NCBI RefSeq assembly: GCF_000315625.1
Contig: NW_005434631.1
Span: forward strand, 310,001 to 374,000
Length of the DNA stretch: 64,000 nucleotides
Source of the DNA: Guillardia theta CCMP2712
Taxonomy: Eukaryota; Protista; Cryptophyta
Reading direction: 5' to 3'
The position numbers and the translations under genes were made by a program. A model generated the notes under the pieces. That model saw nothing but the letters and a program-made list of their open reading frames with translations. It made no database searches and had not been told where the DNA came from. Below, one piece after another: positions 49,919 to 52,885 of this stretch; the first letter of the stretch is position 1, and the number at the start of each line of letters is the position of its first letter.

Positions 49919-52885
49919 ATGCCTTCGCGTGGAGCTCTGGCGCTGCGGACAGCTGCTGTGTTGCTCTTGGCTCTGCAGACCGCGCACTCCAGACCTCTGG
50001 TGAGGAACGTGAAGGACCACAACGAGTACAAGAAGCTCTTGAAACATCACGCGGAGGTCACTGGCCTCCCTGTGATTGTCGACTTCTACAGTGATGGTTG
50101 TGGACCCTGCCGGATGGTAGCGCCGGTCTTCAAGCAGATGGCGGAGCAGTACAAGGACAAGGCGGTGTTCGCTAAGGTCGACATCAACAGGAACTACCAG
50201 ACGGCCTCTGCAGAGCAGATCCGGAGCATGCCGACCTTCAAGCTCTTCCTCTTCGGGAAGAAGCGCGACGAGTTTTCCGGAGCGGACACGCAGAGGTTGA
50301 ACACCATGACGCAGCAGCTGATCCGTGAGTCCGAAGCTAAGAACATCGAGGTCACGTTCGAGGCGCTCAAGTCCTTCTACCAGGAGCATGCGCCCGAGAA
50401 GATGATGGAGATGGACGACAAGAAGCTCCAGGACATCCTGGACAAGGCCGGCAAGGGAGGAGGGCCAGGGCATTACGGTCTTGTCAAGGCTCTCAAGCAA
50501 AAGTACAAGGGGAAGGCCCCCAAGACTCGTCCTCGAGCCGTCCCCAAGCAAGAGACGGCCGCGGAGAAGCCTGCGAGCCCTCCGTCTCCCCGAGGAGGAG
50601 CGAGCAAGCAAGAGGCCAACAAGCCCAATCTTCACCTAGCCACGGTGGAGCAGCTTGAGAAGGAGTTGTCTAAGAGGAGAGAGGAGGAGGCAGCGAAGAA
50701 AGCTGAGGCAGAGGAGGACGATGACGACACTCCTTCCTTCCCTATCTACGACCGCAAGAACAGAAGCGACGTTGAGAACGTCGTCATCATCGGCTCAGGA
50801 CCAGCGGGTCTGTCTGCTGCCATCTACGCGTCACGAGCAGGCCTAAAGGTGCTCCCGCCCTCCTCTGCTGCTCTTGTTCAGCACTCCTTCCCTCCCCTTC
50901 TCCCTCCCTCCCCTTCTCCCATCTCCCCTCCCTCCCTTTCGTCGTCATACTCCACCTCCCCTTCCCTCTCCTTCCCATCCCCCTTCCAATCTAAAACCTC
51001 ATCTTTACCCCCTCCCCCTCCTTCCCTCCTTCTCTGCTGTGTTGACAGCTGACCAAGAGTGGCAGCCTGTGCTCGTGGCTCCTCCGATGGGCGGGCAGCT
51101 GCAAGGGAAGGGAGTCGGAGTTGAGAACTACCCCGGAGTCAACGACACGACTGGACCGAACCTAGTGCACGGCATGCAGGAGCAGGCAGCTCACTTCGGG
51201 ACGGTCTTCCTGCAGGAGCTGGTGGTATCCGTCGACCTCTCCTCCCGTCCATTCCGCGTGCGGACCAACGAGACTGAAGTGAAGGCAAACGCGATGATCA
51301 TGGCGACTGGCGCCGACTCGAGGTGGCTTGGGGTGCCAGGGGAGTACGAGCACAGGGGAGGAGGAGTGTCTTCATGCGCCACGTGCGATGGCTTCTTGTT
51401 CGCAGATCAGGATGTAGTGGTAATCGGTGGAGGCGATACCGCCATGGAGGACGCGCTGGTGCTCGCAAGGACCTCGAAGACTGTCACTGTCATCCATCGC
51501 CGAGACAAGTTCCGAGCATCCAAGGTCAAGATGTCTTCCCTTTCCCCCTCCCTCCCTCCCCTCCCTCCCCTCCCTTCCCTCTCCCTCTCCCTCGTTTCCT
51601 CCCCTTCTCACCGTAGTTGTTGCGTCCTGACGTCACCGGCTAGGTGCTTGCCGAGCGGGTGTTGTCGCATGAAAAGATCAAGGTAATGAGGATTGAGAGG
51701 TGAAAGAGGAGAAGGATGACAAGTGTTTCAGGTTGTGTGGGACACCGAAGTCATCGAATTCATCGGCAAGAGAGTTCGCGTGATGCCCAACGGCCTGACA
51801 GTGAGGAATTTCGAGGGCTGCGATCGTGATTGACCTGCAAATTCAGGTCGAGATCGGCGAAGACGGAAACCCAGTGTTGGAGGTAACGAACATCTTACTC
51901 TCCTCTCCTCTCCTCCCCTCGCATGTCATGCTCTACTCTACTCTACTCTACTCTACTCTACTCTACTCTGCTCTACTCTGCTCTACTCGCTTCTTCAGTC
52001 CCTCTTCTCCCCTGCTATCGTTTCCTCTCTTTCTGTTCAGGAATGTTGAACTCAATGTGGCTATCTAACGCTTGTCAACTAAGGACTTCTCGAAGCTCCG
52101 GGTGAAAGAAGTTCAGAAGCGACTGGACGCTGCAGGTTTCGAGTGCTGAGCGTGAGGAGGAGGAGGGTGAGGCTTATGCAGGGATCAGCTACGCGGGCGT
52201 CAAGGACAAGGAGGCGCTCGTGAAGATTCTCACTGATGCCTACAAGGATGCAGCCAAAGGTGAGGGGGAGGAGGGAGGTGACAATGGGAGGAAATGACGG
52301 ACCTTCAGCGGGCAACGGGGAGGACGATGCAGTTGTGACGGTAGAGGAGAAGTCGATCTTGTCCAAGGTGAAGAAATGGGAAGTGGAAGCTTCGCGATTG
52401 ACAAGCGAGCAGATCAAGATGAAGAACAAGAAGACTGGAGAAGAGTCCCTGTTCCCTTGCACTGCTGCCTTTGTGGCCATTGGACACGATCCAAACACCA
52501 AGTTTGTTCAAGGGCAGGTGAGGAGGAGGAGGAGGAGGAGGAGGAGGAGGAGTGTTTGGGCATCTAAGGCTGCTATCAGGTTGACATGGACTCCAACGGT
52601 TACATCAAAGTGGTTGCGGGCAGCACGCGGACGAGCGTGGAGGGCTTGTTTGCAGCTGGGGATGTAGCTGACCACGTCTATCGTCAGGTACCTCGAGCAG
52701 ACTCTCTACTTGTCCCGCTGACTTGAGATGCAGGCTGTGACGTCAGCAGGAACAGGAGCCATGGCCGGTAAGACTCCTGCCCCCCCCCCCCCCCCCGTGC
52801 TTGTCTTACCCTCCATGCAGCGCTGGACGCCGAGCGGTGGCTGAGCGAGCAAGGATTCTGCAGTGCAGCAGCAGCAGCAGCATGA
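49919..52885 (+). CDS. Signal-peptide thioredoxin + low-MW NADPH thioredoxin reductase (NTR/TrxB) fusion
   Basis: Signal [24 protein letters not shown]. Trx [11 protein letters not shown]...MPTF. NTR motifs [98 protein letters not shown]. Confidence 0.92.

What the first reader, a model, noticed from the sequence alone, without database searches (positions are those of the whole stretch)
49919..52885. Secretory-pathway thioredoxin-thioredoxin reductase fusion in Trx-first order
Seen: an N-terminal signal peptide (predicted cleavage AHS-R, no Phe at +1), then Trx with a non-canonical DGCGPC site (Trp replaced by Gly), a small helical linker domain ([12 protein letters not shown]...LKQKY), then a full NTR (CATC, HRR NADPH motif). 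Established: plant and cyanobacterial NTRC is NTR first, Trx C-terminal, and plastidic in plants. In complex-plastid algae a signal peptide without +1 Phe points to ER/secretory or periplastid targeting. Inference: a self-contained NADPH-dependent disulfide-reducing system in the ER lumen or periplastid compartment. Related fusions may already be known from other red-lineage algae.
Basis: partly seen in the sequence, partly recalled or inferred. Interest (0 to 1): 0.7.

Follow-up and report, generated by a model that had tools for sequence, protein, structure and literature searches.

The report
Signal-peptide thioredoxin plus thioredoxin reductase fusion
This Guillardia theta gene encodes one protein with a signal peptide, a thioredoxin and a complete NADPH thioredoxin reductase; the fusion is real and expressed, but diatom workers already know it as "NTRC/sNTRC", so only some details found here appear to be undescribed.

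Summary
Window 49919-52885 (+) holds a 12-exon gene. Exon by exon it matches a 677-residue transcript-derived Guillardia theta protein (P0126). The protein has a signal peptide, a thioredoxin with GCGPC, a four-helix linker, and a low-molecular-weight NADPH thioredoxin reductase with CATC and HRR (346 bits against TIGR01292, cut-off 343).

The diatom orthologue Phatr2 56519 was GFP-localised to the periplastidic "blob" (Weber et al. 2009, cited in PMC3101018). This very gene (gt_72625) is listed as its homologue in ASAFind 2.0 (PMC12136025). The fusion is therefore already known.

Three points that I did not find in the papers searched:
- The family also occurs in plastid-free choanoflagellates. 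53 of 79 full-length members end in ER-retrieval-like xxEL/xxDL.
- Its reductase halves form their own clade, apart from true NTRC.
- Cryptophyte and pavlovophyte members lack that tail. They carry a MANF-like SAP insert in the NADPH domain, which the public model GUITHDRAFT_72625 omits.

The final compartment in G. theta (periplastid or ER lumen) is unresolved. The scan noted this stretch before (s1-450954, s1-432951).

The parts
49919..52885 (+). Whole coding region: 12 exons, 677 codons plus stop. This is GUITHDRAFT_72625 / gt_72625.
   Evidence: exon-by-exon identity to P0126; P0135 named GUITHDRAFT_72625.
49919..49990 (+). Signal peptide, residues 1-24. The cut is before R25-P26, the conserved start of the mature protein.
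   Evidence: hydrophobicity; the -3/-1 rule holds in 51 of 51 complete homologues; TargetP signal peptide in PMC12136025.
49991..50344 (+). Thioredoxin domain, residues 25-142. The active site C61-G-P-C64 lies at 50099-50110 and is preceded by Gly instead of Trp.
   Evidence: PF00085, E 3.5e-23 and 1.8e-22; (G in 62, S in 15 and H in 2 family members).
50345..50506 (+). Four-helix linker domain, residues 143-196. It is specific to this family and matches no known family or fold.
   Evidence: AlphaFold2 helices, pLDDT about 82-94; no Pfam, Atlas, PDB sequence or fold match; best Z 4.1.
50507..50776 (+). Residues 211-238 are predicted disordered (pLDDT under 50). The conserved acidic helix 'PNLHLAT..QLE.EL..R' (residues 236-267) follows.
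   Evidence: pLDDT under 50 at 211-238; helix 243-267; conservation across 50 homologues.
50777..50848 (+). Start of the reductase at the end of exon 1. The FAD-binding GSGPAG motif lies at 50792-50809.
   Evidence: G292, G294, P295, A296 and G297 are invariant.
51066..51524 (+). Exon 2: FAD and NADPH domains, with redox-active CATC (51375-51386), GGGDTAMED and the HRR NADPH motif (51495-51503).
51644..51800 (+). Exon 3 (51644-51682) and exon 4 (51732-51800), continuing the NADPH domain. Intron 3 (51683-51731) lies inside this span.
   Evidence: P0031 reads through these joins without interruption.
51847..52367 (+). Exons 5-8a (51847-51882, 52084-52135, 52182-52259, 52309-52367). They encode most of the roughly 83-residue insert in the NADPH domain (residues 489-571), which begins in the last 11 codons of exon 4 (from 51768). 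The MANF-like SAP core is residues 512-554.
   Evidence: gap in the alignment to PDB reductases; helices 518-527 and 538-554; MANF/ARMET C-terminal domain 2.8e-4; Pfam SAP in 8 of 11 members.
52413..52885 (+). Exons 8b-11 plus the last exon (52413-52517, 52580-52687, 52734-52767, 52821-52885): the rest of the NADPH domain and the return to the FAD domain ([16 protein letters not shown]). The C-terminus ends ..[12 protein letters not shown] and has no xxEL.

Best explanation
The gene encodes a self-contained NADPH-dependent disulfide reductase that is inserted co-translationally into the ER lumen through a cleavable signal peptide.

Electron path: electrons should pass from NADPH (bound at HRR and GGGDxAxE) to FAD. 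From FAD they go to the reductase disulfide C414/C417 (CATC), then to the fused thioredoxin C61/C64 (GCGPC), and finally to client disulfides. In NTRC (from background knowledge) this last internal step runs between the two subunits of a dimer; whether it does here was not tested.

Family: the protein belongs to a distinct eukaryotic family with the layout signal peptide, thioredoxin, four-helix linker, reductase. Diatom workers call this family 'NTRC/sNTRC'.

Compartment: the family's ancestral home is probably the ER lumen, given xxEL tails and its presence in choanoflagellates. In algae with complex red plastids the protein may move on into the periplastidic compartment, as shown by GFP for the diatom orthologue. 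For G. theta my odds are about 0.5 periplastid, 0.35 ER or chloroplast-ER lumen, and 0.15 elsewhere in the secretory pathway.

Shown here: the gene model, the single transcript, the domains and motifs, and the family distribution. Inferred: enzymatic activity, the electron path and the compartment.
For: - The gene model equals transcript protein P0126.
- Thioredoxin matches at E 3.5e-23. TIGR01292 scores 346.4 bits against a cut-off of 343.45. The best PDB matches are bacterial thioredoxin reductases at 3e-88.
- All catalytic and cofactor motifs are invariant across 50 homologues.
- A signal peptide followed directly by [AG]-RPxVR is present in 51 of 51 complete homologues.
- 53 of 79 full-length homologues end in [ED]L, for example HTEL, KTEL, RDEL and KADL.
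- Four choanoflagellate species carry the fusion.
- The diatom orthologue 56519 was GFP-localised to the blob-like structure, next to a 6-phosphogluconate dehydrogenase that could supply NADPH.
- This is the only strong low-molecular-weight reductase hit in the genome.
Against: - No enzymatic or localisation data exist for the G. theta protein.
- Read-level RNA evidence could not be obtained.
- The Trx-reductase docking test was not run by the tool.
- The G. theta protein has neither an xxEL tail nor a recognisable transit-peptide-like extension: the thioredoxin fold starts at the cleavage site. Neither ER retention nor periplastid import is therefore explained by known signals.
- The NADPH source in the G. 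theta compartment was not examined.
Confidence: 0.75

Rival explanations
1. The protein stays in the ER lumen (including the chloroplast-ER and nuclear envelope) and never enters the periplastid compartment. It would provide an NADPH-driven reductive pathway for non-native disulfides, ER-associated degradation or peroxiredoxin recycling.
For: The signal peptide is followed at once by the conserved mature domain, which is equally conserved in plastid-free choanoflagellates. xxEL/xxDL tails occur in 53 of 79 family members. The weak OST3/OST6 luminal-thioredoxin match is sub-threshold. The insert resembles the SAP domain of the ER protein MANF.
Against: The G. theta protein itself has no xxEL tail. 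The diatom orthologue with the same N-terminus gave a blob-like (periplastid) GFP signal.
Confidence: 0.35
2. The protein is a plastid-stroma NTRC equivalent that reduces 2-Cys peroxiredoxin, like plant and cyanobacterial NTRC.
For: It carries the name 'NTRC' in the diatom literature. In the quick tree the family sits next to the NTRC-like clade, with 89 SH-aLRT and a long-branch warning.
Against: The domain order is reversed. There is no Phe at +1 and no transit peptide. ASAFind calls it 'Not plastid'. It forms a separate clade with 100 support. It is present in choanoflagellates.
Confidence: 0.04
3. The fused thioredoxin is not the reductase's substrate. The two halves act independently, or the thioredoxin acts as an oxidase or isomerase like protein disulfide isomerase.
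For: The Trp before the active site is replaced by Gly, Ser or His across the family. Weak matches to protein-disulfide-isomerase-domain models were seen. A long disordered spacer separates the two halves.
Against: The CGPC motif is the thioredoxin type, not CGHC. The fusion and the linker are conserved across distant eukaryotes. All reductase motifs are intact.
Confidence: 0.08
4. The protein is cytosolic and its start codon has been misassigned, so the hydrophobic segment is not translated.
For: None was found.
Against: An in-frame stop lies 18 nt upstream and the next Met is M66, after the active site. The transcript ORF is complete with the same start. The presequence is conserved in 51 of 51 homologues.
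Confidence: 0.02

Closest known systems
Diatom 'NTRC/sNTRC' (Phaeodactylum tricornutum Phatr2 56519; Weber, Gruber & Kroth 2009, cited in PMC3101018 and PMC12136025)
   Same: It has the same architecture: a signal peptide cut before RPxVR, an N-terminal thioredoxin, then the reductase. ASAFind 2.0 lists gt_72625 as the best BLAST hit to it.
   Different: Other diatom members of the family (Nitzschia, Odontella) have a roughly 60-residue acidic C-terminal tail ending in ..EL and no SAP-like insert; the P. tricornutum sequence itself was not seen. The G. theta protein has the insert and no tail. Only the diatom protein has a GFP localisation.
Plant and cyanobacterial NTRC (e.g. PDB 7p9d; green-algal P0103, P0105, P0116)
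   Same: A low-molecular-weight NADPH thioredoxin reductase is fused to a thioredoxin in one polypeptide.
   Different: The order is reversed: NTRC has the reductase first. NTRC has WCGPC or SCGPC rather than GCGPC, and is stromal. It forms a separate clade and is not the best PDB match (1e-69 against 3e-88 for bacterial reductases).
Bacterial thioredoxin-first fusions (P0106-P0117, 425-428 aa)
   Same: Thioredoxin precedes the reductase.
   Different: They have C[PA]PC active sites, and no signal peptide, linker domain or insert. They are very distant in the tree, with a stem of 2.56.
MANF/CDNF C-terminal SAP domain (PDB 2kve; 6h9u chain B bound to the BiP nucleotide-binding domain)
   Same: The insert profile matches it best (E 2.8e-4 to 2e-3). 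The shared core is D-x-x-K-L-R-V-K-E..L-D..G....G...K with a helix-loop-helix. The counterparts of the BiP-contact residues R133, K138 and E153 are R (invariant), K/R/Q and D/E.
   Different: MANF's CKGC is replaced by YAGV. There is no saposin-like domain and no RTDL tail. The domain is inserted inside an enzyme domain. The similarity is below Pfam thresholds for single sequences.
ERdj5 and the mammalian ER reductive pathway
   Same: Both are thioredoxin-type reductases of the secretory-pathway lumen. If the insert binds BiP, both would also be coupled to BiP.
   Different: According to PMC11204020 and the abstract of PMC5331760, mammals have no luminal thioredoxin reductase and draw reducing power from cytosolic TrxR1. 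Here the NADPH-using reductase itself carries the signal peptide.

Membership tests
Low-molecular-weight thioredoxin-disulfide reductase (TIGR01292 / TrxB type) | The whole-protein score exceeds the curated equivalog cut-off. | tested here: met
   P0126 scores 346.4 bits against a cut-off of 343.45. The two non-insert homologues tested score 331 and 327, just under it.
Low-molecular-weight thioredoxin-disulfide reductase (TIGR01292 / TrxB type) | It has the redox-active CATC, the FAD motifs GxGxxG and GD, and the NADPH motifs GGGDxAxE and HRRxxxR. | tested here: met
   All are invariant or nearly invariant in 50 homologues.
Low-molecular-weight thioredoxin-disulfide reductase (TIGR01292 / TrxB type) | NADPH-dependent reduction of thioredoxin. 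| not testable with these tools
   This needs an enzyme assay.
Thioredoxin (PF00085) | The Pfam score exceeds the gathering threshold and the active site is CGPC. | tested here: met
   82 bits against 23.5. CGPC lies at 50099-50110.
Thioredoxin (PF00085) | A canonical Trp precedes the active site (WCGPC). | tested here: not met
   Gly here; G, S or H across the family.
NTRC sensu stricto (plant and cyanobacterial) | The reductase is N-terminal and the thioredoxin C-terminal. | tested here: not met
   the order is reversed.
NTRC sensu stricto (plant and cyanobacterial) | The reductase module groups inside the NTRC clade. | tested here: not met
   separate clades with support of 100 and 99. This is a quick tree with no stand-alone reductases included.
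NTRC sensu stricto (plant and cyanobacterial) | Plastid-stroma targeting. | tested here: not met
   ASAFind says 'Not plastid, signal peptide identified'. There is no Phe at +1.
Signal-peptide Trx-first reductase family (diatom 'sNTRC', Phatr2 56519) | A signal peptide is cut directly before the conserved RPxVR, then come a G/S-CGPC thioredoxin, the four-helix linker, the PNLHLA helix and the reductase. | tested here: met
Signal-peptide Trx-first reductase family (diatom 'sNTRC', Phatr2 56519) | Periplastidic (blob-like) localisation. | not testable with these tools
   The only report is for P. tricornutum.
MANF/ARMET C-terminal SAP domain (PF10208 / SAP PF02037) | Significant sequence or profile match. 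| tested here: inconclusive
   the profile against PDB gives 2.8e-4, and the top six hits are all MANF. Pfam SAP matches 8 of 11 members and ARMET_C 5 of 11, all under the gathering score.
MANF/ARMET C-terminal SAP domain (PF10208 / SAP PF02037) | The CXXC motif in the loop and the C-terminal RTDL. | tested here: not met
   YAGV replaces CKGC. The domain is internal.
Protein disulfide isomerase family | CGHC active sites and the a-b-b'-a' layout. | tested here: not met
   a single CGPC domain, and protein-disulfide-isomerase models score far below their cut-offs.

The most novel reading that the evidence does not exclude
The family is an ancestral NADPH-driven thioredoxin system of the ER lumen, kept in choanoflagellates and many algae through an xxEL tail. 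Mammals are reported to lack such a luminal system. In cryptophytes and pavlovophytes the tail would have been replaced by a MANF-type SAP domain inserted into the reductase. That domain would dock on the nucleotide-binding domain of the luminal or periplastid Hsp70 (BiP). This would retain the enzyme and couple disulfide reduction to the chaperone cycle, much as ERdj5 does.
Probability: 0.15. Interest if true: 0.8.

Novelty: already known. Interest (0 to 1): 0.42.

Why it matters
How disulfides are reduced inside the secretory pathway is an open question. In mammals no luminal thioredoxin reductase is found, and forcing Trx1/TrxR1 into the ER is toxic (PMC11204020). This family shows that many protists place a complete NADPH-to-thioredoxin chain behind a signal peptide. 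That group includes choanoflagellates, the closest relatives of animals.

For complex-plastid algae it is the only candidate thioredoxin reductase of the periplastid compartment. Its targeting does not fit the usual signal-peptide-plus-transit-peptide rule, so it is a useful test case for targeting predictors.

For this finding itself the value is mainly confirmation plus a corrected gene model.

Tried and rejected
**Steps that gave nothing**
Loci that other tools produced automatically over that stretch (L001, L002, L006, L007) were not used. The word index is only indirect evidence: RNA-guessed runs hold 0.51-0.61 of the words, roughly the exon share.
- Complex prediction of the reductase module with the thioredoxin domain was NOT FOLDED by a tool rule, so it gives no evidence either way.
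- The linker domain had no Pfam hit, no ESM Atlas hit and no PDB profile hit. The fold search reached only Z 4.1 or less, with EF-hand-like helical matches that are not meaningful.
- Weber et al. 2009 is not held. Its result is taken second-hand from PMC3101018 and the PMC12136025 supplements.

**Ideas considered and dropped**
- Selenocysteine read-through of the TGA at 52147 ('GFEC-TGA'). The 46-nt intron 52136-52181 removes that codon, a second TGA follows, and the transcript protein and P0031 support splicing.
- Skipping exon 6 (a join from exon 5 to 52136) is also in frame, but neither the transcript protein nor the homologues support it.
- A 15-residue stretch that I first kept in exon 8 is a 45-nt intron (52368-52412) according to P0126.

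**Not run**
- The large representative search was not run because the word search already settled the family.
- The joined spliced protein was neither assembled nor searched. Exons were searched by reference, and the database protein P0126, which equals the model, was used instead.
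Full report
**What is there**

The window belongs to an 87-Mb, 669-contig cryptophyte genome. Guillardia theta proteins match the gene at 100%.

Between 49919 and 52885 on the + strand lies a gene of 12 exons and 11 GT..AG introns of 45-217 nt. I built the model by eye from the sequence. I then checked it exon by exon, carrying split codons but never storing a joined sequence, against P0126. P0126 is a 677-residue protein from a G. 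theta MMETSP transcript marked 'complete'. Every exon matches, with the start at 49919 and the stop at 52883-52885.

An in-frame TGA lies 18 nt upstream of the ATG. The next Met is residue 66, after the thioredoxin active site.

P0031, from a related cryptophyte, reads through the positions of introns 2-6 as one open frame. That independently supports those joins, including the 46-nt intron 52136-52181.

The public model GUITHDRAFT_72625 (P0135, 616 aa) skips exons 5-8a.

I worked beside those places and sent them to no search tool.

**Anatomy**

- *Signal peptide (residues 1-24).* It has a hydrophobic core, with A at -3 and S at -1.
- *Thioredoxin (residues 25-142).* Pfam E is 3.5e-23. The active site reads SDGCGPCR, so the usual Trp is Gly.
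- *Linker (residues 143-196).* It forms a confident four-helix domain. I found no Pfam, Atlas, PDB sequence or fold relative for it; the best Z was 4.1.
- *Spacer and helix.* Residues 211-238 are predicted disordered. A conserved acidic helix (PNLHLAT..QLE..) follows at 236-267.
- *Reductase (residues 285-669).* It is a complete low-molecular-weight thioredoxin reductase with [26 protein letters not shown] and FAAGDVAD. It scores 346.4 bits against TIGR01292 (cut-off 343.45). The best solved relatives are bacterial enzymes at 3e-88, ahead of plant NTRB (8e-74) and NTRC (1e-69).
- *Insert.* The alignment to solved reductases breaks at residues 489-571, which form an insert in the NADPH domain.

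This is the only strong TIGR01292-type match in the genome. Earlier notes of the scan report large selenoprotein reductases elsewhere in the genome; I did not check them.

**The family**

The word search found hundreds of proteins with the same thioredoxin-first layout. They come from:
- cryptophytes (Chroomonas, Cryptomonas, Baffinella);
- a pavlovophyte;
- diatoms (Nitzschia, Seminavis, Thalassiosira, Odontella, Cyclotella, Grammatophora);
- Bolidomonas and Pseudopedinella;
- four choanoflagellates (Acanthoeca, Savillea, Didymoeca, sp. UC4).

In 51 of 51 members with a complete N-terminus, a hydrophobic presequence ends in a small residue directly before the invariant RPxVR. That motif is already part of the conserved mature domain.

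53 of 79 full-length members end in [ED]L, for example HTEL, KTEL, RDEL, KADL, HSEL and HIEL, with ..ESVGAEL in diatoms. This tail follows an acidic C-terminal extension.

Cryptophytes and the pavlovophyte group lack both the extension and the motif. Instead they carry the insert.

A quick maximum-likelihood tree of the reductase modules gives these results:
- The family is monophyletic, with SH-aLRT 100 and a long stem.
- It is separate from the NTRC-like clade (99).
- It is separate from actinobacterial reductase-first fusions.
- It is separate from the bacterial thioredoxin-first C[PA]PC fusions (100).

No stand-alone reductases were in the tree and the careful search did not finish, so I make no claim about the donor lineage.

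**The insert**

Its core (residues 512-554) is predicted as helix-loop-helix. A profile of 11 inserts finds the MANF/ARMET C-terminal SAP domain as the top six PDB hits (E 2.8e-4 to 2e-3), followed by the RNF34 SAP domain. Pfam SAP matches 8 of 11 members and ARMET_C 5 of 11, all below their thresholds.

MANF's SAP domain binds the BiP nucleotide-binding domain through R133, K138 and E153 (PMC6358605). In the HMMER alignment these residues fall on an invariant Arg, a K/R/Q position and a D/E position of the insert. MANF's CKGC is not conserved. This is a lead, not a demonstration.

**What is already known**

Moog et al. [quoted passage not shown]

The ASAFind 2.0 supplements (PMC12136025) record the following:
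- Phatr2 56519 'NTRC' is scored as a blob-like structure by GFP fusion, with the signal peptide cut as VHA-RP.
- 'Guith gt_72625 NTRC', with exactly this N-terminus, is listed as its best BLAST hit.
- That entry is scored 'signal peptide, not plastid'.

So both the fusion and this gene are in the literature, under a name that hides the reversed domain order.

In the papers searched I found no mention of the choanoflagellate members, the xxEL tails or the SAP-like insert. That is absence in a limited library, not proof.

**Mechanism and compartment**

The enzymology is inferred from intact, invariant motifs. Electrons should run from NADPH to FAD, then to CATC, then to the fused CGPC thioredoxin and on to clients. 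Entry into the ER lumen is well supported.

The final address is not settled.

*For the periplastid compartment:*
- The only experiment, in a diatom, points there.
- A periplastid 6-phosphogluconate dehydrogenase could supply NADPH.
- The cryptophyte proteins have no ER-retrieval-like tail.

*For the ER lumen:*
- There is no transit-peptide-like extension.
- The same N-terminus occurs in plastid-free choanoflagellates.
- The xxEL tails are widespread.
- If the diatom GFP fusion carried only the N-terminal presequence, it would not have reported a C-terminal signal. I could not read the original paper to check this.

One caveat cuts both ways. The same supplement shows a G. theta glutaredoxin homologue of another 'blob' protein that has a signal peptide and ends in KFEL.

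My odds for G. theta are periplastid 0.5, ER lumen 0.35 and other 0.15.

**Verdict**

The fusion itself is already known. Moderate interest remains in the family-level features and in the corrected gene model.

Noticed in passing
window 51847-52367 (exons 5-8a): The public protein model GUITHDRAFT_72625 (P0135, 616 aa) omits the exons that encode the SAP-like insert. The transcript-derived P0126 (677 aa) includes them.
   Followed up: yes
window 52136-52181, 52368-52412, 51801-51846, 52688-52733: Several very short GT..AG introns (45-46 nt). Two of them could be mistaken for coding sequence or for a stop-codon read-through.
   Followed up: yes
C-termini of P0126, P0122-P0131, P0136, P0137: Cryptophyte members end in a conserved EQG[FYH]C plus 2-7 residues. 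Two related proteins (P0136, P0137) have FCTGC or HCGGC there, which could be an extra C-terminal redox motif.
   Followed up: no
P0106-P0117: A bacterial family of 425-428-aa thioredoxin-first reductase fusions with C[PA]PC active sites. In the tree it is unrelated to the eukaryotic family.
   Followed up: partly
window 52985 onwards, minus strand: The stop codon of a convergent neighbour (the giant RING ligase gene of note s1-432784) lies only about 100 nt from this gene's stop, so the 3' UTRs probably overlap.
   Followed up: no
window 51930-51989, 52520-52552, 52780-52796: Simple repeats inside introns: (CTCTA)n, (GAG)n and a 17-base poly-C run. Introns 1 and 2 are CT-rich and of low complexity.
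   Followed up: no
PMC12136025 supplement, G. theta gt_92918: A G. theta glutaredoxin (GLRX2), the homologue of another diatom 'blob' protein, has a signal peptide and ends in KFEL. ER-retrieval-like tails and periplastid assignments therefore co-occur for a second redox protein.
   Followed up: no
G000:C8:878315-878860 and G000:C324:486-1127: The only other TIGR01292-like matches in the genome are weak (E 4e-14 and 1e-9). This gene therefore appears to be the sole low-molecular-weight thioredoxin reductase of G. theta.
   Followed up: partly
P0152 (MMETSP transcript): It groups with the choanoflagellate sequences and ends in RTDL, the same tail I recall for human MANF (from memory). Its source organism was not identified.
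   Followed up: no
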